In this document: positions 7,694-59,926 of the stretch, piece after piece
Numbering within the stretch: the first letter of the stretch is position 1
Layout of the letters: the number at the start of each line of letters is the position of its first letter
Assembly: GCF_947568905.1 (NCBI RefSeq)
Contig: NC_079170.1
Span: 53,506,001-53,570,000 of the forward strand
Origin: Ostrea edulis
Taxonomy: Eukaryota
Direction of reading: 5' to 3'
Length of the DNA: 64,000 bases
Program-made: the position numbers and the translations under genes
Notes under the pieces: generated by a model
What the model was told of the DNA's origin: nothing
What the model saw: the letters and a program-made list of their open reading frames with translations, nothing else
The model's database searches: none

Positions 7694-10600
7694 ATGAGAA
7701 CCAGTTTAAATATTTGTAGTTGGAATGTCGGGGGTCGGTTATCTGAACATTATGACAAGAGAGTTTTGGGGAGAATTTAATAACTTTGAATTAGTTCTCT
7801 TAACAGAAAACACGTGTGGGCTATGAACACAAAATCCAATTCCAAGATTTTCACTACTATCCATTTTGTCGTCAACAGTTGAGGAACAATCGATATTTTG
7901 GAGGTCTTGGCATTCTGATACGTAAAGACATTAAAAAGGGACTTAAAATTCTCAATGATGGCACTTCAGAATATCAGTGGATAAAATTGTGCAAGGATTT
8001 CTTTGACTTTAAGAGGGATATATACCTATGCATTATATAGTATGCTCCAAAAAGCAATACTGACCTATTAGAATTGCTGGAAAAGAATAGTTTAGAGAAA
8101 TATAAAAATTTAGGGGATATTGTTTTGACTGGTGATTTTAATGCCAGAACAGGTTCAGATGATGAATATATAGCAGGAGACAGTAACCTTCACATTCCAG
8201 TAAACCATAATAACTACAATGTTGAATTAGCAATTGAACAGAGAGTTAGCCAAGATAATGCTGTTGATCTTAGAGGCAAAGACTTGTTAGAATTTTGTAT
8301 ATGTAACCAAATACGTATTTTAAATGGAAGATGTTTTGGTGATAGTTCGGATAATTTTACTTGTTTCTAACCTAATGGTTGTAGTCTAGTTGATTATGTG
8401 CTTGTCTCACAAGATTTATTTCATGATATTCTATATATGGGTGTGTCAGATTTTAAAGCAATTTTTTCTGATTGCCACTGTAAACTCTCTTTCAAGATTT
8501 TAGCACCTTTTGATAATAACAGTAGGAACAATGTGTCTTGTTTACATGATTTCCCTTTAAGATATATGTGGAATATAAACAGTGCATTAAATGTTCAAGA
8601 AACTTTGGCACACCCTGTAATTCAAAAGGAAATGAGACAGTTCTTAGATGAAGAAATCACTTTAGACAGTTTGGGAATAAATAATGCCACTAACAAAGTT
8701 CACATGATTTATTAAAAAGTTTGTATATTCTCACTAAAGAAAAAGAAGTCTAAAATGCTAAACAAGAAATGGTTTGATCAAGACCTAATGAAAATTAAAA
8801 TGAAAAAAAGCACTAACTCTATCTCATTTCCCTAAAGATCTGATAGTGCGAGGTTCTTATTTCAAAATGAATAAACAATATTCAAAACTAAGAAAACTGA
8901 AGAGAAAAGAATTTAAACAAAACATTTTAAACCAGCTTGATGAATTTGAGTCTAACAATCCTAAAGAGTATTAGTAAACCAGCTGCGAAATGAAAAGATA
9001 GGTGATCAAAACTGTATTGAGGGTGATACATGGTTCCAATATTTTTCAGATCTTACTTCTGTCTCAGACAATATACGGAAAAAACTAGATACTCTTGAGG
9101 AAAAGCTAAAGTAATGGAACATAATAATTTCAGTTTTTTCCCTGATAGACAAGAAAATTACAAAAGCAGAATTACAAGAAGCATTTTCTAAACTTAAATC
9201 CAAGAAAGCTCCTGGATTAGATAATATTTCTAATGAAATACTTAAAGCATCACAGCACTTCATCAATCCTTTTTTGCTGAATCTTTTTAATGCTGTGTTT
9301 ACAGCTGGAGAATACCCCTCAAAATGGTCAGAAAGCTTTATTTGTCTTCTTTTCAAATCTGAAGATCCAAAATAAGCCAGAAAATTACAGAGGCATAGCT
9401 ATTAACAACAGTATTGGAAAAGTGTTTAACTTAATAATGCACCACAGACTTGACAACTTCTTGCTGGAGAATGATATCATTCATAAATCACAGATAGGTT
9501 TCTCTAAGAAATCTCGCATTTCAGATGATATTTGTGTGTTGAAATGTTTGATTAACAAATATCTAAAGGCTGGTGATAAGAAATTATATGCCTGCTTTGT
9601 TGATTTTCGCAAGGCATTTGATAAAGTCATTCATGTTGGCATTATGTATAAACTACAATCATATGATATCAGCGGGTATTTTTACAGAATTCTTAAATCT
9701 ATGTATAAAAACGACCGATTGTGTGTGAAAATAAATGATAAAAGGACAGATTTTTTCACATCTAGGTTTGGAGTTAGACAAAGTGATGTCCTTAGCCCAT
9801 CTTTATTTAAACTCTTTATAAATGACCTCCCAAGTATTCTAGATGACAGTTCTGTTCCTGTTACTCTAGATAATGAAAAGATTTCATTCTGTATGCCGAT
9901 GACCTTGTACTATTATCCAATACCAAGTCAGATCTCCAACATAAACTAAATATCCTTCATGATTACTGTAGTGAATGGTGTCTAGAAGTAAACATTAAAA
10001 AAAAAACAAAAGCAATAATTTTCAACAACTCGGGTAGACTACTAAAGGAAAAATTTTGTCTTGATAATGATACTATAGAATGTGTAAAACACTACAAATA
10101 TTTGGGTTTAACTCTTGAAAGCAATGGAACGTTTATTGAAGCAAAGAAACAGTTATATCAAAAACGCTTAAAGGCATGCTTCAAATTTTACAGAGATGTA
10201 AAAACTGCTAATCCCTCTATAAAAAGTTTTTTTTACATATATTTGATCATTGTATTAAACCCATAGTATTGTATGGTTGTGAGAACTGGAGCATTATTAA
10301 TGTTACCCCAAAAAGAAGAAACCTCGCACTTTTTTATATATTCAAAGAGGGGGAGGTGGAAAAGCTAAATATGAAATTCTGTAAATATATTATGGCGGTG
10401 TCTAAAACTTGTACAAATATAGGGATCTATTCTGAACTGGACAGGTACCTATTATATATTGATATGCTAAAGCAAACATTTATGTACTGGTATAGACTAG
10501 AACACTCAACTTCAAACCTATTACAGACTGCTTTCAATGAGTGCAGGTCTAACACCATTAACAGTGACTGGTATTCTAGTATATCATTCTACAGTGAAAA

Positions 10601-11177
10601 ACTAAATATCAATTTGCCCCACTGCAAAAAATTATGTGAAAATAAATTTAAATTGTACATAAAAAAGCAACTGCGTAACAATTTCTCAAACTTTTGGGAA
10701 AATATCTGTACCAGTTATATGCAAGGATTTGGAAAATTAAGTACATACTTCCAGTACAAAAGGTTGTTCAATTTCGAAAAATACCTGAATTTAAAAACTC
10801 GAGACAATCGGGTAATTCTCACTAAATTCAGAATTAGTAATCATTATCTACGGATAGAAACAGGCAGATATGAAAGAAAAATTGATAACCATGGTAAATA
10901 TGAAATTCTTCCTAGATGTGAAAGAGTCTGTCAACACTGTATCTCAAGTTCAACAGAGGATGAATTGCATTTTCTACTTGAATGTCCACTATATAATAAT
11001 CCTAGAGGAGAATTTTTTAATAAGATATTTAAAACCTTTCCAAACCTAGTACTGCTTAACAATACTGATCTGTTTACATGGATTATGTCAAATGAAGATC
11101 CTGAGTTTGCTGTTTTATTATGCCAATATTTAATTGTGAATTTCAATACAAGAAAACGACATACATGTACAATATAG
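7694..11177 (+). pseudogene. LINE ORF2: AP endonuclease, reverse transcriptase and C-terminal cysteine motif, frameshifted
   Basis: MRTSLNICSWNV at 7694; GDFNARTG; NYRGIAINNSIGKVF; LYACFVDFRKAFD; GVRQSDVLSPSLF; YADD at 9892-9903 after a frameshift; LRIETGRY...CQHC...EDELHFLLECPLY. Confidence 0.9.
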
Positions 11178-11422
11178 TTATGTGCATGTATAAGATGCAA
11201 GTTGATAACTGCAACATAGTTACTATGCTTGTACTATATGAATATGTGTTTTGTGTGTTTATTATGCATTGATAGATGTGATGGCTAACTCTCTGTTCAT
11301 CATGCAGTGCAGTTGTCTTTGTTTTCCTTTGGCATGTGCTTCTGTGATTTTGGACTTTGTCAATGTACATCATTATGCTCCTCTTGATGCCCAAATTGGT
11401 TGAATAAATATTCTAATTCTAA

Positions 11423-12732: not shown

Positions 12733-13413
12733 AATTAATTGCAAGTAAGTTTTGATTTCCTTGTGGTGGTTTTGTGCATTGCTGTTAAATATTTGAAAAC
12801 AAGTTGCCTATTGCGTAAATCCAGGCACATCTGAGTCGAAACGTCGGTCGAAGCATAAATCGTCACCGACTCCGGCAATTACACGTTTTCCAGAATCAAA
12901 ATATGAATGCTTGCGAAGAGAAGTCGATGAAGGCTATGCTTCTCGACTTCTCTAAAGAGAATACGTGGGACATGTGTCCCGGACTACATTAACACCCACC
13001 CGTAATTTATTCAGATTGAACAGTTGTGAATTTTTCTTTTAAATTTGAAAGGTTATTCATTTTACCTTTCATTATCAAAATATATTCCATGTGCCTTTCC
13101 ATAATTTTATACTTTCAACACTTTTCTTTAAAATGCAAATAAATCGGGCTCGGTATGCTGTAAATATTTTACAAAATTGTATGTCAAGTTGCCGTTTTTG
13201 CGTTTAGGTTACCAGCTGTTAAACATTAATGTTTTGGGGAAAATCTAAGGTATCTGTACAATACACACTATTCTTATTTGTTATTCTTTTCATGCATTGA
13301 ATAGAAAAGTTGTTAACTATACCGTAATGATCTATGTCATTGAGTATGTTTGTGCACACAGAGTAAATTCGAAAGGTAACACACTAACCGGTCCTTGACG
13401 GTACGTAGAATCA

Positions 13414-13555: not shown

Positions 13556-14378
13556 ATTAAGGAGCTAAAATACCTTAGTAAGAATGATCTAACTGTGTCT
13601 CGGAACACACCCTCATCGTAGGACAGTATCATTTTAACAATAGAACATTAATTTATCTAAAATTACCTCAGTATATGTTTATCTATATGTCATCTAGTCA
13701 CACATCAAATTTCACATAAATGACTGGTAATGATAGACTTAGAGGAGGCTGTGGACATAAAACCGACTATCGTGAAGCGTAAATACTGTGTAACCATTGT
13801 GAAATTCTATGTGACTCATTTTATTGCATATATTATTTTAATAAGACTGAAAAAAGCAAAACAACAAACCTTGATCTTCATGAATATTTTTTTAAATGAA
13901 ATTCAGAAAAGCAAGCCAAACTTTATATAATCATATTTTAATTCCGTTATACAGTAAGCCATTGAACATGAAATGAAAACAAATTAAGATATTGCAACAA
14001 GAATCATTCAGTTAGAATTCAACGACAGTGAACTAAAAATCTACAGATAGTTATTTGATAATGTACAGAGTTTTGTAAAGGGATATATCTCAGATTTACA
14101 CTTCACAATAGTCGGTTTTCATGGCCACCACTCCTTTAAATTGTTACCAATCTTCATTCAATTTCATGTGTGACTAAATGACTTATAGATCAAAATAAAC
14201 TGTTGTAATTTGGGCCCTTTATTGGTAATTTCCGTCATTTCTTTAGTAATGTTGATGATGAGCAGTGATTTTATGCACCTGGTTGTTGATAGATAATTGA
14301 AACCCTTTCAACTCAATCTACGCTCAGATACGGTTTTAAATGGATTTTCATTTGTAGGCGCAGACAACAGACCAGACT

Positions 14379-16149
14379 ATGTCTAGTACTACTCCGAGAA
14401 TTCCGGAATCAACAGCTCTGTTTCAGAACTGTGAAGTTTTGACCACGGAATGGGGAAGCAGAGTCTATCTACTGGGTACCAATGGGTTCTGCAAAAAATG
14501 TCTGCTTAATATTTCAAAGGTATCTAATAGTTGTAAAAAAAAAAATATAAAATTAAAAAATATCCATATAAATTATAGTGAAAATCTTTAAAAATCTTAT
14601 GCTGATTTGACATATGATATGGATTTTAACATGTAATATTCCTATATTTTATGTACTTGAAAGTATAAATAATAAAATGTTTTTCTTTGGTTTGTTAAAC
14701 AGGAGGTAAAGGTCCCAAACATTACAGAAAAAAATTGCATAATCCGCTAGTGTGAGAATAAAATATCTAACGCGAGTTGTGCATTTTTTCTGCAGTGTTT
14801 ACCACCTTCATTTACAATCCAAAGAAACTTTTTTATCATATATTATTAGTCACATTATACTCCTTATCATGAGATAAATAAAGTCTGACAGAGTTTATTT
14901 CATGAGTCATAATAACTGCAGCTCAGTTTTTGTATCCAGTAGGCTGAGTGTTGCATCTAAAGGGGTTTCATTGTTGTCCACTTGTCTAACTATCGGACAC
15001 TCTCTAGAGTATGTTGTAGCTATCATGATTATTGCATCACAGTGTGTCCATCTGTTTGTCTGGTTTTTTGTCCATCACAGAATTCCGTAACTGAGAAATA
15101 GGACTTTAATATTGGAATATGTACTTGTGTCAATTACATGTAATATGCACCATGACAGCTGATGTCATAGTTATGTATAGATGTTCATTTATTGAACATA
15201 TATTTTGTTTATATTAGCACCCAACTTGTAAACTGATAGAGTATGTTCTTGTTTAATGTCCTATGAATGAGATTTCAGGATGTGAAATGAGAAGACACTG
15301 ATAGTTATGAGTTATAAATTGCCATTCTAGTAGATTGTAAAAGCCATGTTCTATATAGCACTAACTAACAGGTGAAAAAGTTGTCATTTGGATTATCTCC
15401 TATGGTAGACCATCCAAATCAAATGCCATGCATGTAGATTCAAATTGAAACCGAAATTAGATATCGGATATCACTAGTTACAACTACATTGAAAATGGAG
15501 AAAAGAGTCACAAAATATCGGTTAGTATTTGTTTGTTACTAGTGCATAGAGGGTTATATAAGAAAGCAGTACATGTAGGTATCAGGGCTAGAGTAACACC
15601 AGACAGCTTTTTCTCACATTATCACCAGTGTGAGATCGACTTTACCCATGTGAGACAGCCATGTGAGATTTTTCTGTCTCACACTGCTGCGACGTCATTT
15701 GATTGTGACGTCATATATTTTCTATGATTTACGTTACACGGTGAAGATTTACGTTACACGGTGAAGCAAAAATATTTTGCATTGTTATCTTTAAATTTTA
15801 ATGTATATAGCTTTCTGTTGGACAACCTGGGGTTTTTTAGTTTACACTTACAGTGTAAACCATTTTCGGATACGCTCTTTCTGCCTATCTAATTAGTTTT
15901 TGCATCGAGGTTCAAATGAGGATTTTGATAATTTAGAATTTTCTCAAAGCTCCTAAATTTATGCACTAAACTGTAGGTAAAATGTGAGAAAAATAATCCT
16001 TCATTATTAACTCGTGTGGGGTAGGGAAATTCCACCTCTGGAACAAGATTCGCTGTCTAGGACTCGGCAAAGCCTCGTCCTAGACTGCGAATCTTGTCCC
16101 CTCGGTGGAATTTCCCTATCCCACACTCGTACTAATAAAGGATTCTATT

Positions 16150-16206
<57 letters not shown>

Positions 16207-19200
16207 GTCAATTTTTCAAGATTCCTGCTTTTTATACAGGTTATCCAACAGCTTCAGCCCAGTGTTGTTTCCTTGCAATGCTGCTCTACCAGATTAGATG
16301 ACATAAAGTTAAATGAGGAGGATGCTCTTAGGAAACTTCAGATATCTTCAGTGTCTCTTTATCTGAGGATGTTATTGACAACACTGCTTGGTGTAAGTCA
16401 CAATAACATTTTTATTGATTTCTTGTTAAAACAATGAGAGAGAGCATATTCGAATTTATGTTAAAATTTATTTTCATATGCATGCAATTTCATTGATAGT
16501 CCTGACAATTCTGTGTCTTTGTATGTCAATTTATTCCAGGTAATGTTTATCATTAGTGTTCATTTTATCAGAGCCATTGATTAAATAATTCTATATAAGA
16601 GTGTTGAAATGTAACTAGTTGTACATTTTTCTACAGAATGGACTTGTCTCAGCCTTGCTCTTCAAACAAACAGTGTTGAATTCCCAGCAGTCAGGACTGG
16701 CATCAGAGGCAGATTTCAGACGAGCTTTGACAGAGGTAAATCTTCTAGGTCAAAGTCATTGTTAGAAATTAGATATTACCGTGACAACTTAGGGAGAGTT
16801 GTATAATAGTATTACAGGGTTATGATCAAATTGATCAAACAGTTTCATGCTACTGGTTATTATAATAATAATAATATGTACAAAAGCTTACACATCAGTC
16901 CAATGTAATATAAACAGGAACATCTCTATAGCAGTATAGGTGTGGCCAGTATTGTTTTCTGTATAAGCGAAACCGTTACCCTATTTAGATAAAAAAAAAA
17001 TATGAACTATTAAATATGTCTGTAACAGATTGTTTATGTTTGTTGGATAATCACCAATGAATTAATTAAATGGTGCAGCAGACAACAAATTCCATTAGGG
17101 ATAATATCCAAACTTGTATACCGGTACTGGGCATATCGATTTCTCTATTTTGTCGTCTCCTTAAAACAGGTGAAGAAGATTCCAAATTGTAAACTTCATC
17201 TGGCAGATATACCAGTGGAAGTACTAGAGGAGAAGTCCTGGGGTGTTCCTGGTGTGAGGGAGAAGTTAACCTATGCCAGGAGATTGTATGAAAAACAGCA
17301 AAAACAACAAAGCAGGTGAGTATCATTATTTTTCAGGATTACTCAGAAAGGAAAGCATGCATGGACATTTGTACAGCTGTACATTTGATGTTTTTTTAAT
17401 TCTGAATTCAATAAAGGTGCCTTTTTAGCATGTGTACATGAATGATGAGAAAGTATCAAACTAAAATGCAGACATTACATGCAATTTTCCAGCCCTGAGG
17501 ATGAACATGATAGGGAGTCTGACAAAGAGTATAGACAGTGTGAAATAGAGAGGGAATTCAGTTCCTTACCAGCATTCAAAAGAATCTTCATCAGTGACAG
17601 AAACAGATATCTAACTTACTCACTGAAGAAGGCTGCAGAGCCTACTCCAGCAGGTCAGTGGTCGCGGTCCATCAAGCTCTGTAGGATTGGGAGATGCACA
17701 GTAAAATATGAGCATAACAAGGGGTTATTCCTGTCTTGCCAATATTTCAATTTTTTTTACGTTTTCTTACTCATCAGTGTGGTTTTTATACACCCTCATG
17801 ATTATCTGGTAACCGTCTGTTTTATCATCTGCACTATTAATGTTACCTGAACTCGGATTAGTGGAGAGAGTAAAGAAAATAGATAATAAAAATTTCATTT
17901 TGTACAAATTTAAATGTATTGAAAATTAATGATTCACAGATTGCTTAATCATTTTGATATTTGTCTGTATTTTGGACAATGAGAGATATTTTTCAATCGT
18001 CAAGTGTCAGACAAACTTAAGGTTAATTTGTTTTGATATTAGCTTGATTCATCAAGAAATAATAAATGGACATTTAATAACCGTAGGGAATCTTATTTTC
18101 TTGTTAGTTTTCATTCATTGTCAGCATGTTTGTTTTAACCATGTTAAATCAAAGTGCTACAGCTGAACTTGTTCCTGAATCTAAAAAAAATTAAAATTTT
18201 GACTACAGTATCATTAAATTACAAAAAGGAGTCTCTCATTGCAGTAAAAGATGTACAGCATTGCTCACACACAATCTTTAGATACTCTATTCCAACTTAC
18301 AATGTTTGTACCTAGGATCTGATTTAAATTTGTTATCAGCTTTACAATACCATGAAAGTAATTATGATGGTAATTACTCTAAATGATAATGACTGATCAG
18401 GGTTGGCAAAAAAGTGGTCAATATGAGTATTGACCGGGCCGGTAGTCAATATTGGTCAATACTGGTTAAAACCGGTCAATACTGGTCGATTGAAGATTAT
18501 TTGGTCATTATAGTCTGTGTTATTTATTTTAAATGTTTAAGTGACCATTATGGTAAATAGAAATACTGTAATTCATAACATGCACTATCAGTTTATAATA
18601 ATGTGCAAATGACTCTGTTGAATTGGGGAAGATGTAAAAGTTTCTGTTCAAATTTCTTAGTTTAACAAGAAATACCTATAAGTATTGTTTCATCAATCTT
18701 CATTTTTAACTGTTGAATAAACATTTGAGGGGGTGGGTTGGTGATGTTTTCATAACAATAACAGGCACACTGGTCATCTCTGGTCCCAGCCTATGCTTAT
18801 TTTAAAACACCTGTCAACTCTGCTTCCTGTGCTCAGGTAATGACCAGCTACCTTTTATTCTTAATCTGTCCAGGTACATGTTTTAAGAGGTCTGTCTCCA
18901 ATTGTCAAACTATGCTATACAATGTAGTACTGTGACCCTCTGGTAGGTACTGAAGATATTGCAGTCAGTTTCAGCAAACCAAATATATTAAACTTATGAA
19001 ATTACATTTGATTATCTAATGAAAAATATTAATCAACAATTGATCCATATAATGAAAAGACTTAATTTATCTTTATCTTTGCAAGAAATGTACAAAAATA
19101 GGAAAATGGACAGTTTAAATCACAATTGACCAGTATTGACCACTTGGGGAGTATTGACCGTGACGGTTAAAACCCGGGGGTGGTTTTAACCGCCCAACCC

Positions 19201-20661
19201 TGATATGATGAGGTGTTGGTATTAAACCTTTACTTTTAAAGCTTGAATTTTTTTCATATATTTTGATAATTTTACAATAATTTGATAGTAAATTTTTCTT
19301 CAGATAAAACACCAGTTGTGTTAGGAATAGTGCGAAATGAACATGTGGAAGGAATTAAAGCTAACTGGGACACGGTAGATCTAGATGCAGACAAACTAGC
19401 AACGTAAGTACATAGAAGATCCCAATCCAGACAAACTAGCAATGTCAGTACATAGAAGATCCCAATCCAGACAAACTAGCAATGTAAGTACATAGAAGAT
19501 CCCAATCCAGACAAACTAGCAATGTAAGTACATAGAAGATCCCAATCCAGACAAACTAGCAATGTAAGTACATAGAAGATCCCATTCCAGACAAACTAGC
19601 AATGTAAGTACATAGAAGATCCCAATCCAGACAAACTAGCAATGTAAGTACATAGAAGATCCCAATCCAGACAAACTAGCAATGTAAGTACATAGAAGAT
19701 CCCAATCCAGACAAATTAGCAATGTAAGTACATAGAAGATCCCAATCCAGACAAACTAGCAACGTAAGTACATAGAAGATCCCAATCCAGACAAACTAGT
19801 AATGTAAGTACATAGAAGATCCCAATCCAGACAAACTAGCAATGTACATGTAAGTACATTGAAGGTCCCAATCCAGACAGACTAGCAATGTAAGTACATT
19901 GAAGGTCCCAATCCAATCAGATAATCTTTGATGAAAGAATTTTGCTGGAAAATTGAGTACATGTGTTTAAGTCAGACTTTAGATTAGGCCAACCATGATA
20001 AATTTTAAATTTTACTGTAACTTTGTCTTAAGTTATATAAGAGGGGATGAAAATGTAAACAAACAAAATTTCAAAACACTGCAGTCTAATACGTGCATCT
20101 TTGTAGTGTGTATCCAACTATACATCTTCAGAAGCCAAGAGTCTGACTTGCTGTCACTCTAATATACCCTTAGGCAGATCTAGTCCCATTTTATATGGCA
20201 CCCCCACCACCACCACACACACACCTATAGTGCTTTTCACAAAAGATCTTACGATAAATAATCATCGTAAGAGAAAATGTACGATTTTTTTCCCTTTTCA
20301 CAAAGAAACTTACATATATTTAAAACTTTCCAAACCTACGTACATGGTTGATGTAAAATGAAGAATTCATTTAAGTCTTATGTAGTGGATAGATTATCAG
20401 TATATTAGATAACAGTGGAGTTTTGAATCTGCTGCAATCAGTTAATACTACTTTATCAGTTATCACCAATAACAAATAACACTTTTTATTACAAAGTCAT
20501 AATGCACTGTTGTACACTTTGTTTCCAGTTTAGAGAAGAATTATGCGCTGTACGAAGGCTTGAAGTATGGTGCTGTGATAATGACAATCACCTTTTTTTA
20601 TACAAGAAGACTGCGCAATAGAAAAGCCTGGGACAATTATTTCAATGTAAAAAGACGCTAA
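14379..20661 (+). CDS. Divergent TraB-domain protein (TRABD-like), 7 coding exons, about 310 aa, with C-terminal transmembrane anchor
   Basis: Exons 14379-14519 (acceptor at 14357; the start may lie further upstream), 16240-16392, 16637-16735, 17170-17315, 17493-17653, 19304-19403, 20529-20661. Phases are consistent. Collinear with TRABD as I recall it: GSRVYLLGT, IQQLQPSVVSLQCCSTR, NGLVSALL, DFRRAL, IPNCKLHLADIP, FISDRNRYLTYSLKKAA, PVVLGIVRNEHVEGIKANW, then a hydrophobic segment followed by RRLRNRK. Confidence 0.85.
15550..16140. mobile_element. Non-autonomous element ending in a long hairpin (Crypton-like, tentative)
   Basis: Arms ttattaactcgtgtggggtagggaaattccacc...gtctaggac and gtcctagac...ggtggaatttccctatcccacactcgtactaataa surround the loop tcggcaaagcctc (16004-16138). 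A similar short hairpin lies near 45080-45160. The family assignment is from memory of such elements. Confidence 0.4.
16152..16202. repeat. (CT)n microsatellite
   Basis: Pure CT run about 35 nt upstream of the acceptor at 16239. Confidence 0.95.
18398..19202. mobile_element. Non-autonomous TIR element (CAGGGTTG termini, hAT-like)
   Basis: Starts cagggttgg and ends ccaaccctg; subterminal ggtcaata/tattgacc repeats at both ends; no clean TSD found. Confidence 0.55.
19388..19915 (+). repeat. 40-bp minisatellite containing the exon end and 5' splice site of the TRABD-like exon 6, 13 copies
   Basis: Unit cagacaaactagcaat|gtaagtacatagaagatcccaatc; the first unit overlaps the exon (donor at 19404). 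Confidence 0.95.
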
Positions 20662-21127: not shown

Positions 21128-21292
21128 CAAGGGAGATTAGAATTGTGTAGACTCAATTCAAGGGAGATTAGAATTGTGTAGACTCAATTCAAGGGAGATT
21201 AGAATTGTGTAGACTCAATTCAAGGGAGATTAGAATTCTGTGTAGACTCAATCCAAGGGAGATTAGAATTCTGTGTAGACTTGATCCAAGGG
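21128..21292. repeat. 31-33-bp minisatellite (caagggagattagaattgtgtagactcaatt), about 5 copies
   Basis: Direct tandem copies. Confidence 0.9.
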
Positions 21293-21647
21293 AAATATTT
21301 TTCTTCTACACATTTACCCAATATGTTGTTATTGTGCTCCAAACCTGGTACTATTTGCCGATATTTTAAACTACTTCGATATTCCATCTGAAATATTTAA
21401 TGTATTTTTATAAACCAGAGAAGTGTGTGACTGAAAAGGATAAAACTTGAATTACCAATATTGAAATACATTCAAAGAAACCACAGATATAGCCATTTCC
21501 TTACTAGCATTCCGTTCTCTCAACAGAGGGAACATTATGCAACATACTTATTTATACCATTACCTACTACCCATCTGGGGCATACGCTGACCACAATATT
21601 TCTCCAGGCCCCTCTATCATGTGCAGTTTGTTTTAGTTCTTTCCACA

Positions 21648-22245
21648 TTTTTAGCCGAGTTGGAACGAAGTTGAACTCGGCTATTGGTTTGGTGATGCGG
21701 GCGGTTGGCCGTCAACAATTGGTTTCCAGATGATAACTCGAAAAGTTTACAATCTAATCAAATGAAACTTTGAAATATTGTTGGGTACCAGGTAAGGAAG
21801 ACCCCTATTGATTTTGGAGAAAAATTGTCAAAGGTCAAGGTCACAGTGACCGAAAATAAAATGAAAATTTAAGAAAAATTTGGTTTCCGGATGATAACTC
21901 AGAAAGTTTAAATCTGAATCAAATGAAACTTTGATATATTGTTGGGTACTACGTAAGGAAGATCCCTATTGATTTTGGAGAACAAAGGTCAAGGTCACAG
22001 TGACCAAATATCGAATGAAAATTTCAGAAAAATTTGGTTTCGGGATGATAACTCAGAAAGTTTAAATCCGAATCAAATGAAACTTTGATATATTGTTGGG
22101 TACCAGGTAAGGAAGACCCCTATTGATTTTGGAGAAAAAAGGTCAAAGGTCAAGGTTACAGTGACCGAATATAGAATGAAAATTTCAGAAATTTTTTGTT
22201 TCCGGATGATAACTCAGAAAGTAAATCCGAATCAAATGTCCTCCA
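21648..22245 (+). mobile_element. Helentron-associated (HINE/pearl-like) element with about 160-bp internal satellite monomers
   Basis: Starts tttttagccgagtt...aactcggct (subterminal hairpin), followed by about 3.3 monomers of 154-163 bp containing aaaggtcaaggtcac and tttccggatgataactc; 3' end missing. Confidence 0.7.
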
Positions 22246-46039: not shown

Positions 46040-49000
46040 ATGGGCGTGACTACAGAATCAAAAAGAGGCGCTACAAAGCCGAGGACCAAATATTCACCTG
46101 AGCAGGTAATATCATGAATTAAAACTGCTAATAAAAATGCATTATAACATTTACATGCATTAGAGGGGGGTGGGGAGTAATTCCATTATGCGAAAATCGA
46201 ATGCCTTAGCTCTACAAGGTTTTAAGGCTTAACTAGTTTGTATAAACTCGTCAATGGAAGTATATAATGTATTTTTGGATGCACTATACAATGGCGGATC
46301 CAGAAGGGGGGGAGGGTCCATGGTCCGAACCCCCTTTATGCGGACCAAAGAGTTTAAGTAATTCAATTTTAACGAGTCTTTGAGTTAAAATGATATGAAA
46401 GGTGGATACTTAATTGCATCATTCTAATTTATCAATACCAGTATATCATAAGAAATAGTTACGATATTATCGTCAGATACAAGTACCACTTAAGAATTCT
46501 TAAAAAGTATACTATGTATGTAACAAAAAAGTTTTGTTTAAGAAGTAGACAATTTGAAAGTGAAAAGGAAGCGCCAGGAAACGCTCAGAATCCAGGATTT
46601 TGCGCCATTTACCCCACGGCTTCTGAGGGCCTGGACGGCCCCCAGACTTCCAGCCTATTGGAGATAACCTTTAAATCAGCTTTTTTACCAATTATTATTG
46701 TTTCACTGCGAAATAAGGTCTGAGTATAGCGATTAGAATGACTAAACTTTTGGAAACAATAAATATACTACTTAGCATTTGCATACATAAAACTATCTCA
46801 AGATATTCCCTTAGATATTATGTACACCAGCAAAGGGTGTAAATGGGGTAGAGATGGAGGTTGTGAAAAGTATGTAAAATATCAAATGCTAGACCCCCCT
46901 TTCACAAATTCATGGATTCGCCTAGTAGATGCACTACATATCTTAAGGAGGTACTCTACATCGCCATAATGGTTGACTTTCTTTTAAAATATGGATGAAA
47001 ATATGAATATTAGTAATATTTGTCTATTCATTCAAAAAGTTTTCGCCTATAGCTGAGTAGCTAAATAGATTAGCACGTCGACTGCTAAACTGTTGATCGC
47101 AGGTTTAAGTCCAGCAGGGATTTTAAATTTGTTTCAAATTGCTTTCGACTAAAACTGCATTTTTTGACTAAATACAGTAAATTTGAAAAATTTTAATTCC
47201 AAAATATTGTTGTACATATCCTCCACTATTCATCCATATCAAATTTCTCTGGTGTAGCATATCTCCTTAGAGTTATACCTCAACAAAACATTTGCATAGC
47301 ACTTTAAAAAAGGATTTATGGCATCTAGGTATAATACGCATATAGATATATGTAATACTATGAATAATTAGTACCGGTCACGTGGGCTCAATGAACTAAT
47401 TAACGATCTTATTTCCCGTACAGCTAGAGTTACTAGAGAGCGCTTTCCAGGAGTCACAGTATCCGGATACAGAGACATTAGAGAACCTGGCGGAAAAACT
47501 GGACGTCAATACAGACAAGGTGTCGGTAAGTCCCGCGTCTGACATCTATCAATATAGCACCACGTCTGACGTCCATCAATATAGCACCGTGTCTGACGTC
47601 TATCAATATAACACCGCGTCTGACGTCTATCAATATAACACCGCTTCTTACGTCTATCAATATAACACCACGTCTGACGTCTATCAATATAACACCGTGT
47701 CTGATGTCTATCAATATAACACCACGTCTGATGTCTGTCAATATAACAGCGCGTCTGACGTCTATCAATATAACACCACGTCTGACGTCTGTCAATATAA
47801 CAGCACGTCTGACATCTATCAATATAGCACCGCGCCTGACGTCCATCAATATAACACCGCGTCTGACGTCTATCAATATAGCACCGCGCCTGACGTCCAT
47901 CAATATAACACCGCGTCTGACGTCTATCAATATAACACCACGTCTGACGTCTATCAATATAGCAGCGTGCCTGACGTCCATCAATATAACACCGCGTATG
48001 ACGTCTATCAATATAACACCACGTCTGACGTCTGTCAATATAACAGCACGTCTGACGTCTATCAATATAGCACCGCGTCTGACATCTATTAATATATCAC
48101 CGTGCCTGACGTCTATCAATATAACACCGCGCCTGACGTCTATCAATATAACACCACATCTGACGTCTATCAATATAACACCGCGTCTGACGTCTATCAA
48201 TATAGCACCGCGTCTGATGTCTATCAATATAGCACAGGGTGATAGGTGTCGGCAAGTCCCGTGTCTGATGTCTATCAATATAACACCGCGTCTGATGTCT
48301 ATCAATACCGGGTTATAGGTGTCGGTAAGTCCCGTGTCTGCTGTCTATCAATATAGCACCGCGTCTGATGTCTATCAATATAGCACCGCGTCTGTTGTCT
48401 ATCAATATAACACCGGGTGACAGGTGTCGGTAAGTCCCGTGTCTGATGTCTATCAATATAACACCGCGTCTGACGTCTATCATTATAGCACCGCATCTGA
48501 CGTCTATCATTATAGCACCGCATCTGACGTCTATCAATATAGCACCGTGTCTGACGTCTATCAATATAACACCACGTCTGACGTCTATCAATATAGCACC
48601 GTGTCTGATGTCTATCAATATAACACCGCGTCTGACGTCTATCAATATAACACCACGTCTGACGTCTATCAATATAGCACCGTGTCTGATGTCTATCAAT
48701 ATAACACCGCGTCTGACGTCTATCAATATAACACCACGTCTGATGTCTATCAATATAACAACGCGTCTGACATCTATCAATATAGCACCTCGTCTGATGT
48801 CTATCAATATAACATTGCGTCTGTCATCTATCAATATAACACCGCGTCTGACGTCAATCAATATAGCACAGGGTATGACGTCTATCAATATAGCACCGCG
48901 TCTGACATCTATCAATATAACACCGCCTCTGATGTCTATCAATATAACACCACGTCTGATGTCTTATCAATATAACACCGGGTGACAGGTGTCGGTAAGT

Positions 49001-52000
49001 TCTGCCTCTGATGTCTATCAATATAGCACCGCGCCTGACGTCCATCAATATAACACTGCGTCTGACGTCTATCAATATAGCACCGCGCCTGACGTCCATC
49101 AATATAACACCACGTCTGACGTCTATCAATATAGCAGCGTGCCTGACGTCCATCAATATAACACCGCGTATGACGTCTATCAATATAACACCACGTCTGA
49201 CGTCTGTCAATATAACAGCACGTCTGACGTCTATCAATATAGCACCGCGTCTGACATCTATTAATATAACACCGTGCCTGACGTCTATCAATATAACACC
49301 GCGCCTGACGTCTATCAATATAACACCACATCTGACGTCTATCAATATAACACTGCGTCTGACGTCTATCAATATAGCACCGCGTCTGATGTCTATCAAT
49401 ATAGCACAGGGTGATAGGTGTCGGCAAGTCCCGTGTCTGATGTCTATCAATATAACACCGCGTCTGATGTCTATCAATACCGGGTTATAGGTGTCGGTAA
49501 GTCCCGCGCCTGCTGTCTATCAATATAGCACCGCGTCTGATGTCTATCAATATAGCACCGCGTCTGTTGTCTATCAATATAACACCGGGTGACAGGTGTC
49601 GGTAAGTCCCGCGTCTGACGTCTATCAATATAACACCACGTCTGATGTCTATCAATATAACAACGCGTCTGACATCTATCAATATAGCACCTCGTCTGAT
49701 GTCTATCAATATAACATTGCGTCTGTCATCTATCAATATAACACCGCGTCTGACGTCAATCAATATAGCACAGGGTATGACGTCTATCAATATAGCACCG
49801 CGTCTGACATCTATCAATATAACACCGCCTCTGATGTCTATCAATATAACACCACGTCTGATGTCTTATCAATATAACACCGGGTGACAGGTGTCGGTAA
49901 GTTCTGCCTCTGATGTCTATCAATATAGCACCGCGTCTGACGTCTATCAATATAGCACTGCGTCTCACGTCTATCAATATAACAGCGCGTCTGACGTCTA
50001 TCAATATAACACCGCGTCTCACGTCTATCAATATAACACCGCGTCTGATGTCTATCAATATAGCACCGCGTTTCACGTCTATCAATATAACACCGCGTCT
50101 GATGTCTATCCATATAGCACTGCGTCTGATGTCTATCAATATAACACCACGTCTGATGTCTTATCAATATAACACCGGGTGACAGGTGTCGATAAGTCCC
50201 GCGTCTGACGTATATAAATATAGCACCGTGTCTGATGTCTATCAATATAACACCGGGTGACAGGAGTTGATAAGTCCCGCGTCTGTTTTGAGCGCCAAAT
50301 TAACATAAACTCAAATAATTGAAGATATCTTCAATTATTTGAAGGTATTATCATTTCATTTGATGCGCTCAACAATTTCATTAAAGATCTCTTCAAATAA
50401 TTAATGATATCTTCAATTCTGAATTATTGCGCGCATTTATTGAATTGATGATAGCATTAATTCTTCAGCTGCTTTGATGCGCGCTTTAATTGAATTAATG
50501 ATATCTTCAAATGAATTAATAATATCAACAATTGAATTGATGCACGCTACAATTCAATTGAAGAGAGCAATAATTGATATGATGATCGCATTAAATCAAT
50601 TGATGAAAGCAATAATTGAATTGATGTGTGCATTAATTAATTTGATGAGAGCAATAATTGATTCAATGCCTTTATTAATTCAATTATTGCTCTCTTCAAT
50701 TGAATTAAATATATCATTAATTCTTTGAGAGAGAGCAACTATATAATTAAAGATATCTTCAATTCAACATATCCACAATTGAATTAATTATATTTTTAAT
50801 TGAATTGTTGCTGTCTTTAAAAGAATTGATGCGCACATTAATTCCTTATACAAAAGCATTGTAAATGATTAAAGATAACTTCAATTGAATTGAAGAGATC
50901 ATCAAACTATTTATACTGAGCTTTAAATTAATTATTGTGAGCAATATTTCTACTAAATTGATGCTCCCACCAATTAAATTGAAGAGAGCAATAATTGAAT
51001 TAATGCGCACATCAAATCTATTATTGCTCTCATTAATTCAATTGATGTGCGCATCAATTGAATTGAAGAGAACAATAATTGAATTAATGCGCGCATTCAT
51101 TCAATTATTGCTCTCCTTTATTCAATTGATGCGCGCATTAATTCATTTGATGAGAGCAATAATTGGAACTAATGCGCGCATTAATTCATTTGATGAGAGC
51201 AATAATTGATTTAATGCGCGCATTAATTCAATTAAAGAGAGCAATAATTCTTCAATTATTTGAGTTTATGTTAATTTGGCGCTCCATATGTCTGATGTCT
51301 ATCAATATAACACCACGTCTGACGTCTATCAATATAGCACCGTGTCTGACGTCCATCAATATAACACCGCGCCTGACGTTTATCAATATAGCACCGCGTC
51401 TGATGTCTATCAATATAGCACTGTGTCTGACGTCCATCAATATAACACCGCGTCTGATGTCTGTCAATATAGCACCGTGTCTGACGTTCATCAATATAAC
51501 ACCGTGTCTGATGTCTGTCAATATAACACCGTGTCTGACGTTTATCAATATAACACCGCGTCTGATGTCTATCAATATAGCACCGTGTCTGACGTCCACC
51601 AATATAACACCGCGTCTGATGTCTGTCAATACAACACCGGGTGACAAATGTCGGTAAGTCTGGCGTCTGATGTCCATCAATAAAGCACAGGGTGACTTAG
51701 TCCATATCTTTCTGCTGGTTATGTCCGATCCACTCTTGTGTTAGGATCTAATCAAATACATATTGGGATGGTTTTCCCCCTCACATTAAACATCTTGACG
51801 TATGAACAATGTATATACAGGTGTGGTTCCAGAACAGACGTTCTAAGTTCAAGAGACAGTCCAAGAATTCTCACGTGGCCTGGATGCGAAAGCAATTTTA
51901 CAACTCGGACATGCACAGTCCATGCCAACTTGCTTCTGGTGATGGGAAACAGCACGTGTTGTCACCGCCGAATCAGACACGAGGGGTAGCTGAGAACATG

Positions 52001-57301: not shown

Positions 57302-59926
57302 TCATGACTTTGCCTTCAGGAAAAAATTCTGCAAGCAAGCATATTACTGTTTATAATTCTATAATAATGTAAAATTGTGATTGCTATGTAAATTTATTGA
57401 AAGATTTCCCTAGAGAGACTTCACACTAATATTAAAGCAAACCTGAATTACTTATGTTTAAGAGGGAAGCTACAGTACAATATTCAAGCTTCATTTCAGA
57501 TTAAATGATCTTCAAAGAATTGCAAATTAGGTTATGAGTGACTAACAGCTTTAGCAAAAAATTAGTGAGCACTTCAAGGTATCATGCACACATTTTAAAG
57601 AATTAAAGATATAAGACCTTGAATTTTACCTCTCAAGGTTGAAATTTTCGAGAGATTATGAGTTTAAGAATAAATTTATTTATAGATATAGGGAAAACCA
57701 TACGGACTGGGAGACTACTTCAAGAGATCGAGAACTTAAAAATATCGAAGTTCAAGTCATTAAGAGTCAACTGTATTTCACTGTCAACCTAACAATCTCT
57801 GTTGTCTCAATATACAAAATAAAACTTCATTTTCATTTTCAAAAAAAATCTATTGACTTTGGAGGTTATTATTCAACAATTTCCACCTACAAAGTCATTA
57901 TTTCTTAATTAATGAACTATATATATGCAAGCATCTGTAATTACATGGTTGTAACCTAATGAGATAAATATTTTCCTTTACTCGTTACTCACCTTTAGAT
58001 AAGTTCTAAAAGTTCTATAGTCGGTTTTTAAAGCTTCACAAAATTCCTGTAAATGCAAAAAACATCTTTCATGATTAAAAATGCTTGTACTTTAAATTCG
58101 AAAATCGTATACTGTAGATAACTAACATTTTTACTTCTATTTATGAGAATGTCATATCAAAATTGTCAACCCCTGCTCAACAACAGTCTTCAAATTCTGT
58201 AATTTAATGGTTACATTTGCATTATCATCTTCTAAAGACAGCAGATTTTTTTTATCTAATTCCATATTTAGTATAAAAGAAATCAGCCAATTTTGCTGAA
58301 GGTTGGGAGTTTCAAAATGCTTTGATCAACACTATGACCCTGCTGGTGGCTGATCCATTCAACAGTTAACATTGATCCACCACACAAAAATCTCCATCAC
58401 CCACAACTTGTAATCTATCAATGAAGTCAGCAATCCTTATCATCTAAATTAAATCTAGTCTCGGACTTTTTAGAGAGTATGAACATTACCTGAATGTTTT
58501 CAGCTGGTACATTTATTTAGAGAGTATGAACATTACCTGAATGTTTTCAGCTGGTACATTTAATACAGGCAGGTAATCTGTGGACAGGTAGGTCAAAAAC
58601 TCCTGGCCCTGTGACAATACAATCGGTAAAGACCTTTGTTATCTTAATGTAGAATAGTCTATACATGTACTTTCATTATTGTCACAAGAACATGAACTTT
58701 TTGTACTTTTCTTGATAATTATCATAATAGTGTAAAATGTGCCATTACTACTAACTTCCTCAAACTTACCCTTTTGTCAACCATACACTTCAGACAATGA
58801 GCACATTCTCCCAGAGCCTGCAAAAGACAAAATACTGAAAAGTCAGGTTTCAGATTATTTTAACAATCTTAAATATCTGAAAAATACAAACTGTTATTCC
58901 AAACATATACATGTGTGTGTACAGGGTTCCAACTTCGATTGAATACCTTAGGGGCCAAGTGGGCCCCTGAATAAGAAATCCTGTTAGCCCACATGGAATT
59001 TTAGTAGCCCACACATAACATGAAATTGAATAACATGGTTTTTTTTTTTAAAAGAAAAAGAAACATCAAGTCACATTGCAATTTATTTAAAAAATTAAAA
59101 TATCAATATTTAAATTCTGTTTCCTTCCCCGTAATTCTTTCAAATACCTCTCTCATTTCCACTCTCATTACGTCAACCTAGCAAAAATATCAGAGTTCAT
59201 GGACTTTTATGATCTTTGCTGCGTCTGACTTTAACTCACATTTCTTCAGACTTTTTATGTTATTTCAAAATTTCTCAGCTTTACGATGCTGTCAAGTTTA
59301 TAACTTGGGCAAGCTGTCACAACGATTGGACCTTTCGTGTCATGTTTTGTACACACAGCACGTCATCCCCTTTTCGCCGTCATCGAGCCATATTCTCCCC
59401 TTCTTTCCACTTTGGTTAAAAGCAGACGCTTTCTTTTCGTTTGAAGTAACCCTTGCGTTGTTCAACTTCGGGTTTAAATACATTTTGGAAGGTTTGATAC
59501 CCCAGGAATGTCTCGCCAAGTGGCAAAACCTCAACCGGAAATTGAACTTCAATTATAATAGGACTCGAATCGGTCGGAAAGAAAAATGTTGATCGGACAA
59601 TTATGGTCGCCAAGTGGGCGACGAGAACGGAAATTTTGGGTGCCCACAAGCAAAGTTTAGTCGCCAATGCGAGTGGGCGAGCGGTAATTTGGAACCCTGG
59701 TGTAAATATATACATATATATATATATATAATTATTATTATTTATAATTATTTAATAGTTACATGTATATGGATTCTTGGCAGAGTATATGGACTCATAC
59801 TCCCTGTCAAAGTTTATGGGAGAATATATACTTTGACAGGGAATGTAAGTCCATATACCCTGCCAAGAATCCATATAACAAATATGTCCTACAACAGAGC
59901 AATCAATGTAGAAATCGGACAATCAA

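What the first reader, a model, noticed from the sequence alone, without database searches (positions are those of the whole stretch)
19388..19915. Thirteen tandem 5' splice sites after TRABD-like exon 6, which could switch off the membrane anchor
Donors lie at 19404 (real), 19444 (gtcagt), 19484, 19524, 19564, 19604, 19644, 19684, 19724, 19764, 19804, 19850 and 19890, nearly all GTAAGT. Reading through the first donor gives ACG TAA, so use of any later donor ends the protein at DKLAT, before the transmembrane exon. By the 50-55-nt rule the second donor would escape NMD (soluble isoform) while later ones would trigger it.
Basis: partly seen in the sequence, partly recalled or inferred. Interest (0 to 1): 0.75.

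Follow-up and report, generated by a model that had tools for sequence, protein, structure and literature searches.

The report
Splice-donor minisatellite in oyster TRABD-like gene
In a flat-oyster TraB-family gene, the last 16 bases of the second-to-last coding exon plus its splice signal have been copied 13 times in a row into the intron; this is a real example of a known, usually silent kind of repeat, and nothing here shows that it switches off a membrane anchor.

Summary
A 40-bp tandem array (19388-19915, 13.1 copies, 94% alike) starts inside the exon. It places 13 splice donors at exactly the listed positions: twelve GTAAGT and one GTCAGT. Using any donor after the first reads ACG TAA and ends the protein at ...DKLAT.

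The gene is the annotated Ostrea edulis 'traB domain-containing protein-like' (324 aa, 8 coding exons). The array follows coding exon 7 of 8. The annotated protein is reproduced exon by exon only if the first donor (19404) joins 20529.

The unit occurs nowhere else in the 895-Mb assembly. The orthologous Saccostrea intron has no array, so it is young and local.

This is the same kind as the human F7 intron-7 minisatellite, where only the first donor is used, and as the amphioxus 'mirage' minisatellites. This scan has already reported the kind in many other genes of this genome (CEP152, DOCK7, OXCT1, VPS35 and others).

All indirect evidence favours silent decoys.

Verdict: a new member of a known kind, of low to moderate interest.

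The parts
13229..13249 (+). coding exon 1 (MFWGKSK) of the TRABD-like gene
   Evidence: The exact peptide of P0007 is found here, followed by gtatct.
14358..14519 (+). coding exon 2 (residues 8-61)
   Evidence: The translation is a substring of P0007. Acceptor ag, donor gtatct.
16240..16392 (+). coding exon 3 (residues 62-112)
   Evidence: The translation matches P0007. Donor gtaagt.
16637..16735 (+). coding exon 4 (residues 113-145)
   Evidence: Donor gtaaat at 16736.
17170..17315 (+). coding exon 5
   Evidence: Donor gtgagt at 17316.
17493..17653 (+). coding exon 6 (residues 195-247); its real donor is GTCAGT
19304..19403 (+). coding exon 7, the second-to-last (…DKTPVVLGIVRNEHVEGIKANWDTVDLDADKLA + ac); its last 16 nt form the start of the first repeat unit
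19388..19915 (+). 40-bp minisatellite of 13.1 units, each unit being the exon end plus a 5' splice site
   Evidence: TRF score 925. Units are listed. The unit is found only at this locus in the genome.
19404..19409 (+). authentic donor GTAAGT, the one used by the annotated protein
   Evidence: P0007 is reproduced only by joining 19403 to 20529.
19405..19407 (+). in-frame TAA, reached whenever the first donor is skipped
   Evidence: Read directly from the sequence.
19444..19449 (+). decoy donor 2, GTCAGT, 36 nt after the TAA
19484..19895 (+). decoy donors 3-13 (GTAAGT at 19484, 19524, 19564, 19604, 19644, 19684, 19724, 19764, 19804, 19850, 19890)
20529..20661 (+). last coding exon (T)LEKNYALYEGLKYGAVIMTITFFYTRRLRNRKAWDNYFNVKRR with its stop; conserved hydrophobic segment followed by basic residues
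20700..20705 (+). AATAAA 39 nt after the stop, a likely poly(A) signal, so the intron holding the array is probably the last one
   Evidence: Its function is inferred.

Best explanation
This is a young, locus-specific 'splice-junction' minisatellite of the F7-intron-7 or 'mirage' type. A 40-bp piece spanning the end of coding exon 7 and the start of the last intron of the flat-oyster TRABD-like gene was duplicated in tandem. It was then expanded and homogenised by slippage or unequal exchange.

The intron therefore begins with 12 extra near-identical donors. Splicing most likely takes the first donor met after the exon's acceptor (19404), as in F7. The other twelve are removed with the intron, and the full-length tail-bearing protein is made.

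Shown here: the array, its register with the exon, its uniqueness in the genome, its absence from the Saccostrea orthologous intron, and the fit of the annotated protein to the first donor.

Inferred: that the decoys are silent or nearly so, and the way the array arose.
For: - Array anatomy and donor list.
- The unit matches only this locus in the 895-Mb assembly, and the gene is single-copy.
- The annotated O. edulis protein P0007 is rebuilt exon by exon only with the 19403/20529 junction.
- The last exon is strongly conserved in four oysters. The exon 7/8 junction is kept in spliced transcript contigs of a related oyster.
- Word searches returned no truncated O. edulis form.
- RNA-type runs hold no more than 0.09 of the sampled words, although the array is 34% of the stretch.
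- Five interior units are identical and the two 3'-most units are the most diverged. That is the usual pattern of minisatellite turnover.
- The Saccostrea echinata orthologous intron has no array.
- The same Saccostrea gene has an independent 45-bp x 40 donor array after another exon, and its annotated protein also uses the first donor.
- A random 200-kb sample of this genome held another clear case, at L014:5165-5778.
- Precedents: in F7 IVS7 only the most upstream donor is used although the pseudo-sites are functional (PMC1557585). Amphioxus mirages do not disturb splicing (PMC3087553, PMC3902484).
Against:
- The annotated model may rest on prediction, and contigs drop rare isoforms.
- The decoys are as strong as the real donor (7 of 9 matches to CAG|GTAAGT each; decoy 12 has 8 of 9).
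- From my own knowledge of in-vitro work on duplicated consensus donors, the site nearest the acceptor can be favoured. The F7 paper notes that such duplication studies gave opposite results.
- First-donor dominance was shown in mammalian cells, not in molluscs.
Confidence: 0.7

Rival explanations
1. Leaky decoys that weaken the gene. A measurable fraction of transcripts use later donors, more so with more copies. These transcripts carry the TAA and are degraded or give a tail-less protein. The array then lowers expression as an unselected cost that depends on copy number.
For: The decoys are as strong as the authentic site. All of them lead to the same premature stop. GTCAGT is a working donor elsewhere in this gene.
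Against: F7 pseudo-sites are not used even at low efficiency (PMC1557585). The array words are missing from RNA-type runs. The last exon is intact and conserved.
Confidence: 0.15
2. Regulated choice among the 13 donors makes a soluble, anchor-less TRABD-like isoform (donor 2, escaping NMD) or NMD targets (donors 3-13). This would control membrane anchoring or dosage.
For: The stop codon and distance arithmetic hold. The human TRABD C-terminal segment is necessary and sufficient for targeting to the mitochondrial outer membrane (PMC12329661). The oyster tail is conserved.
Against: The array is absent from the Saccostrea orthologous intron, so it is not a conserved device. Arrays of the same kind sit in many unrelated genes of this genome, which argues for a mutational by-product. 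Donor 2, the only one that would escape NMD under the vertebrate rule, is the one GTCAGT variant. EJC-type NMD rules are not established in molluscs (my own knowledge). No truncated protein is on record.
Confidence: 0.05
3. A helpful U1 landing pad. The repeated donors recruit U1 snRNP and so strengthen recognition of the first donor or protect the last intron from premature cleavage. Copy number would then raise expression.
For: This is inference from general knowledge of U1 binding within introns. No AATAAA lies on the + strand within the intron.
Against: Nothing in this locus requires it. The array is young and not conserved. The F7 study found no autonomous regulatory element in the neighbouring intron sequence (section heading in PMC1557585).
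Confidence: 0.07
4. An assembly artefact that inflates or invents the array.
For: Tandem arrays can be mis-sized in assemblies.
Against: Three DNA-size runs hold 0.74-0.86 of the sampled words of a stretch that is one-third array, although one of them may be the source sample. The units carry distinct point variants in a fixed order. Arrays of the same kind occur in a separate Saccostrea assembly.
Confidence: 0.02

Closest known systems
Human F7 intron 7 (IVS7) 37-bp VNTR minisatellite (Borensztajn et al. 2006, PMC1557585)
   Same: The first repeat unit spans the exon-intron boundary, so the authentic donor is followed by several near-identical 5' pseudo-sites. Unit size is similar (37 vs 40 bp). 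Use of most pseudo-sites would introduce a premature stop.
   Different: F7 has 5-9 sites against 13 here. Silence of the F7 pseudo-sites was shown with 50 constructs in mammalian cells, whereas nothing was measured here. Here every decoy gives the same stop, and the part lost would be a C-terminal tail rather than a protease domain.
Amphioxus 'mirage' minisatellites (Adh3, globins, PGBD5, TnC; PMC3087553, PMC3902484)
   Same: Tandem repeats that span an exon-intron boundary and multiply splice signals. They are reported not to disturb normal splicing. They show concerted evolution of inner units, with the edge units left out, as seen here.
   Different: The phylum differs (mollusc vs cephalochordate). 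Amphioxus units range from 10 to about 160 bp and include acceptor-side cases. Length and somatic instability were shown there and not tested here.
Other splice-junction minisatellites noted by this scan in the same flat-oyster genome (CEP152, DOCK7, OXCT1, AKR, sialin-like, ABCH, VPS35)
   Same: The anatomy is the same: exon end plus donor repeated head to tail at the start of the intron.
   Different: Those are AI notes on other DNA. I confirmed only two fresh cases myself: L014:5165-5778 in this genome and L009:7387-9244 in Saccostrea.

Membership tests
Splice-junction ('mirage' / F7-IVS7-type) minisatellite | Tandem array whose first unit spans a real exon-intron boundary | tested here: met
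   The array starts at 19388, 16 nt before the exon end at 19403. That exon end is fixed by the annotated protein P0007.
Splice-junction ('mirage' / F7-IVS7-type) minisatellite | Each unit carries a copy of the splice signal | tested here: met
   All 13 units carry a donor: 12 GTAAGT and 1 GTCAGT.
Splice-junction ('mirage' / F7-IVS7-type) minisatellite | Local origin from the gene's own sequence, not a dispersed satellite or transposon | tested here: met
   Three units used as a query match only this locus in the 895-Mb assembly.
Splice-junction ('mirage' / F7-IVS7-type) minisatellite | Normal splicing uses the authentic (most upstream) site and the copies stay silent | not testable with these tools
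Indirect evidence only: the annotated protein uses the first donor, and RNA-type runs lack the array words.
Splice-junction ('mirage' / F7-IVS7-type) minisatellite | Copy-number polymorphism (VNTR) | not testable with these tools
   No second O. edulis assembly or reads were available. Metagenome scans found nothing.
TraB / TRABD family (Pfam PF01963) | Match to PF01963 above the curated cut-off | tested here: not met
   P0007 scores 14.4 bits against a cut-off of 26.8. The orthologues score 14.3-20.2 bits. A six-frame genome search with the family does not pick up this locus.
TraB / TRABD family (Pfam PF01963) | Significant homology to a protein that does carry the domain | tested here: met
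   P0007 against P0009 gives BLASTP E = 3e-24 over residues 33-250. P0009 scores 62.5 bits on PF01963. NCBI names P0007 'traB domain-containing protein-like'. The GTAHFS and GMGH motifs of P0009 read GTNGFC and RNEH here.
TraB / TRABD family (Pfam PF01963) | C-terminal transmembrane anchor as in human TRABD | tested here: inconclusive
   The tail is conserved and has a 13-15-residue hydrophobic stretch followed by RRLRNRK. Its Kyte-Doolittle mean is only 1.17 (15 aa) or 0.97 (19 aa). The AlphaFold model draws a helix at 276-306, but pLDDT is below 50. The human anchor is described in PMC12329661.
Regulated alternative 5' splice site coupled to NMD | Transcripts that use the alternative donors | not testable with these tools
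No truncated protein is on record.
Regulated alternative 5' splice site coupled to NMD | Conservation of the alternative sites in related species | tested here: not met
   The Saccostrea echinata orthologous intron (L009:10200 onward) has a single donor and no array.

The most novel reading that the evidence does not exclude
In flat oysters the decoy donors of this array are used at a rate that depends on copy number. The VNTR would then act as a heritable dial that diverts TRABD-like transcripts to a tail-less, non-anchored product or to decay. This would be one instance of a genome-wide class of splice-junction minisatellites that tune gene dosage in a highly polymorphic bivalve.
Probability: 0.06. 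Interest if true: 0.7.

Novelty: new member of a known kind. Interest (0 to 1): 0.27.

Why it matters
Taken alone this is an ordinary, tidy example of a repeat type already described in human F7 and in amphioxus.

Its value is as a clean natural test case. It has thirteen equally strong donors, a single acceptor, and one shared premature stop. Any use of a decoy could therefore be seen at once in cDNA.

Together with the many similar arrays in this genome, it could show whether the 'first donor wins' rule established in mammalian cells also holds in molluscs. It could also show why oyster genomes tolerate, or perhaps generate, so many repeats at splice junctions.

Tried and rejected
No junction reads were obtained.
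2. Pfam scans on single exons found nothing. A six-frame genome search with PF01963 found only a Tiki-like gene on another chromosome, which has no BLAST similarity to this gene.
3. I did not build or search a joined spliced model. I found the database's own annotated protein P0007 through a single-exon HMMER search. I then checked it against the window exon by exon.
4. The look-up of encoding contigs gave no record for P0007. Contigs L012 and L013, which carry exon 6 from other samples, end before the array.
5. Metagenome scans by protein and by a unit pattern found nothing.
6. A genome-wide enrichment test was cut short. In that sample the strict GT[AG]AGT hexamer was present in about 5 of 78 arrays, close to my rough estimate of what base composition alone would give. 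Only one of those was a clear exon-end array.
7. The AlphaFold model of P0007 from four sequences was too poor (mean pLDDT 49) to settle whether the tail is a membrane helix.
8. Micro-exon or recursive splicing idea: each unit reads ccag|13 nt|gtaagt. I rejected it because the tract before the AG is purine-rich, the gap between a donor and the next unit's AG is only 27 nt, and inclusion would shift the frame.
9. Dispersed satellite or transposon origin was rejected, since the unit is unique to this locus.

Full report
**Observation**

The stretch 19388-19915 is a 40-bp tandem array of 13.1 copies with 94% matches and a TRF score of 925.

- Each unit is the last 16 nt of an exon (cagacaaactagcaaC/T) plus the first 24 nt of the intron (gtaagtacatagaagatcccaatc).
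- Twelve are GTAAGT. The second is GTCAGT.
- Each donor matches the CAG|GTAAGT consensus at 7 of 9 positions. Unit 2 matches at 6 and unit 12 at 8.
- Chance is not an issue at this score.

**The gene**

Single exons gave no Pfam hit. I therefore searched one exon (window:17494-17652) with HMMER against the representative library. That returned a 319-aa oyster protein, P0004.

A word search with P0004 then found P0007, 'traB domain-containing protein-like [Ostrea edulis]', 324 aa. It lies on a contig of 88,744,346 bp, the length of the window's own chromosome piece.

I did not build or search a joined model of my own. I checked P0007 against the window exon by exon.

| Coding exon | Coordinates |
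|---|---|
| 1 | 13229-13249 |
| 2 | 14358-14519 |
| 3 | 16240-16392 |
| 4 | 16637-16735 |
| 5 | 17170-17315 |
| 6 | 17493-17653 |
| 7 | 19304-19403 |
| 8 | 20529-20661 |

- These add up to 975 nt, which is 324 codons plus the stop.
- The array therefore follows coding exon 7 of 8.
- The annotated protein requires the first donor joined to 20529.
- AATAAA lies 39 nt after the stop, so this is probably the last intron.
- The gene is single-copy in the assembly.

**Family**

- Pfam PF01963 (TraB) scores only 14-20 bits on the four oyster proteins, below the 26.8-bit cut-off.
- P0007 aligns at E = 3e-24 with P0009, which does carry the domain at 62.5 bits.
- 'TRABD-like' is therefore fair, as a divergent member.
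- The GTAHFS and GMGH motifs of P0009 read GTNGFC and RNEH here. This agrees with another note of the scan that the protein may be a pseudo-enzyme.

**Consequences of using the decoys**

Skipping the first donor reads gca acg TAA (19405-19407), so the protein would end at ...DKLAT and lose the 43-residue tail.

- The junction lies 36 nt after the stop for donor 2 and 76-482 nt after it for donors 3-13.
- The tail is strongly conserved in Ostrea, Saccostrea, Crassostrea virginica and a fourth oyster.
- It holds a short hydrophobic stretch (YGAVIMTITFFYT) followed by RRLRNRK.
- Its hydropathy is moderate: 1.17 over 15 residues and 0.97 over 19.
- The AlphaFold model is too poor to decide whether it is a membrane helix (mean pLDDT 49, tail below 50).
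- In human TRABD a 15-residue C-terminal segment is necessary and sufficient for anchoring in the mitochondrial outer membrane (PMC12329661). An anchor role here is therefore plausible, but inferred.

**Whether the decoys are used**

The indirect evidence is as follows.

- The only O. edulis product on record uses the first donor. No truncated form appeared in two word searches. Records of this genome may, however, be withheld from some tools.
- Six RNA-type runs hold only 0.05-0.09 of the sampled words of window:19150-20700, where the array makes up 34% of the letters. DNA-size runs hold 0.74-0.86. This argues against abundant use of far-downstream donors. It cannot exclude use of donor 2.
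- The tail exon is intact and conserved.
- GTCAGT is the real donor of exon 6 in this gene, so donor 2 cannot be dismissed as dead.

**Origin and age**

- Three units used as a query match only this locus in the 895-Mb assembly. The array is therefore not a dispersed satellite or a transposon.
- Units 3, 4, 6, 7 and 8 are identical, and units 1 and 10 are identical to each other.
- The last two units are the most diverged. They share ttgaaggtccc, and unit 12 has a 6-nt insertion. This is the usual picture of inner homogenisation with older edges.
- In Saccostrea echinata (locus L009) the orthologous exon ends ...atagctag|gtaagt, and its intron has no array. The array therefore arose after the two genera split.
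- The inner units carry T where the real exon has C at its last base. An unequal exchange involving unit 1 could therefore change Thr281. This is an inference.

**A wider pattern**

- The same Saccostrea gene has an independent 45/94-bp array of about 40 copies (L009:7387-9244). Its first unit is the end of a different exon (...RRLYKRLQTDQNN) plus caa|gtaagc. The annotated protein there again uses the first donor.
- In 200 kb drawn at random from two chromosomes I found 78 arrays. One was a clear exon-end case: L014:5165-5778, 44 bp x 14, after an open frame ending ...VQFYDPMSG|gtaagt.
- The strict donor hexamer alone was not clearly over-represented among arrays: about 5 of 78, close to my rough composition-based estimate.
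- Earlier notes of this scan report the same kind of array in many genes of this genome and claim about nine-fold enrichment. I treat those notes as leads only.

**Comparison with what is known**

- The human F7 gene has a 37-bp VNTR whose first unit spans the exon 7-IVS7 boundary. Its 5-9 identical donors are all functional, but only the most upstream one is used, in several cell types (PMC1557585).
- Amphioxus 'mirages' are tandem repeats spanning exon-intron boundaries in Adh3, globin, PGBD5 and TnC genes. They are reported not to disturb splicing and show the same turnover pattern (PMC3087553, PMC3902484).
- I found no paper describing such arrays in oysters in the held library. That does not prove there is none.
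- The present array meets the structural criteria of this kind. The behavioural criteria (silent copies, length polymorphism) could not be tested.

**Verdict**

The best explanation is a young, tolerated splice-donor minisatellite whose extra donors are silent or nearly so (confidence about 0.7).

- The idea of a working switch has no support. The array's absence in Saccostrea, the ubiquity of such arrays in unrelated genes, and the published precedents all count against it.
- The 50-55-nt NMD rule is a vertebrate rule and has not been shown in molluscs (my own knowledge).
- This is a new member of a known kind, already met repeatedly by this scan in this genome. Interest is low to moderate.

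Noticed in passing
L009:7387-9244 (Saccostrea echinata, GCA_033153115.1): The orthologous gene in another oyster genus has an independent 45/94-bp array of about 40 copies. Its first unit is the end of a different exon (...RRLYKRLQTDQNN) plus caa|gtaagc. The intron orthologous to the one studied here has no array.
   Followed up: partly
L014:5165-5778 (G000:C4:85085940-85086553): In a random 10-kb sample, a 44-bp x 14 array repeats the end of an open frame (...RVQFYDPMSG) plus gtaagt. This is a fresh example of the same kind of array. The open frame has no Pfam match.
   Followed up: partly
window 47533-50255 and 58469-58562: Two more duplications that include a donor lie in the same 64-kb window. 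One is a 27-bp array in a homeobox intron, with 51/73-bp variants holding ggtaagtc. The other is a perfect 47-bp x 2 duplication. Both are covered by other notes of the scan.
   Followed up: no
window 14358-19403 (protein P0007): Motifs conserved in a bona fide TraB-domain relative (GTAHFS, VVLEIC, GMGH) read GTNGFC, VSLQCC and RNEH in all four oyster proteins. This suggests a conserved but catalytically altered paralogue.
   Followed up: partly
window 7800-11200: Long open frames with endonuclease- and reverse-transcriptase-like sequence upstream of the gene, probably a non-LTR retrotransposon. This was judged by eye only.
   Followed up: no
window 21128-21293 and 21719-22238: Two further minisatellites (31 bp x 5.2 and 161 bp x 3.3) lie just downstream of the gene's likely poly(A) site. 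161-166-bp arrays recur in the random sample (L016, L017, L018, L019, L027), so that period may belong to a dispersed repeat family.
   Followed up: no
G000:C4:16526090-16532787 (L007): This is the only locus in the genome that passes the Pfam TraB cut-off in six-frame search. It is a Tiki/TRABD2-like gene ([26 protein letters not shown]...).
   Followed up: no
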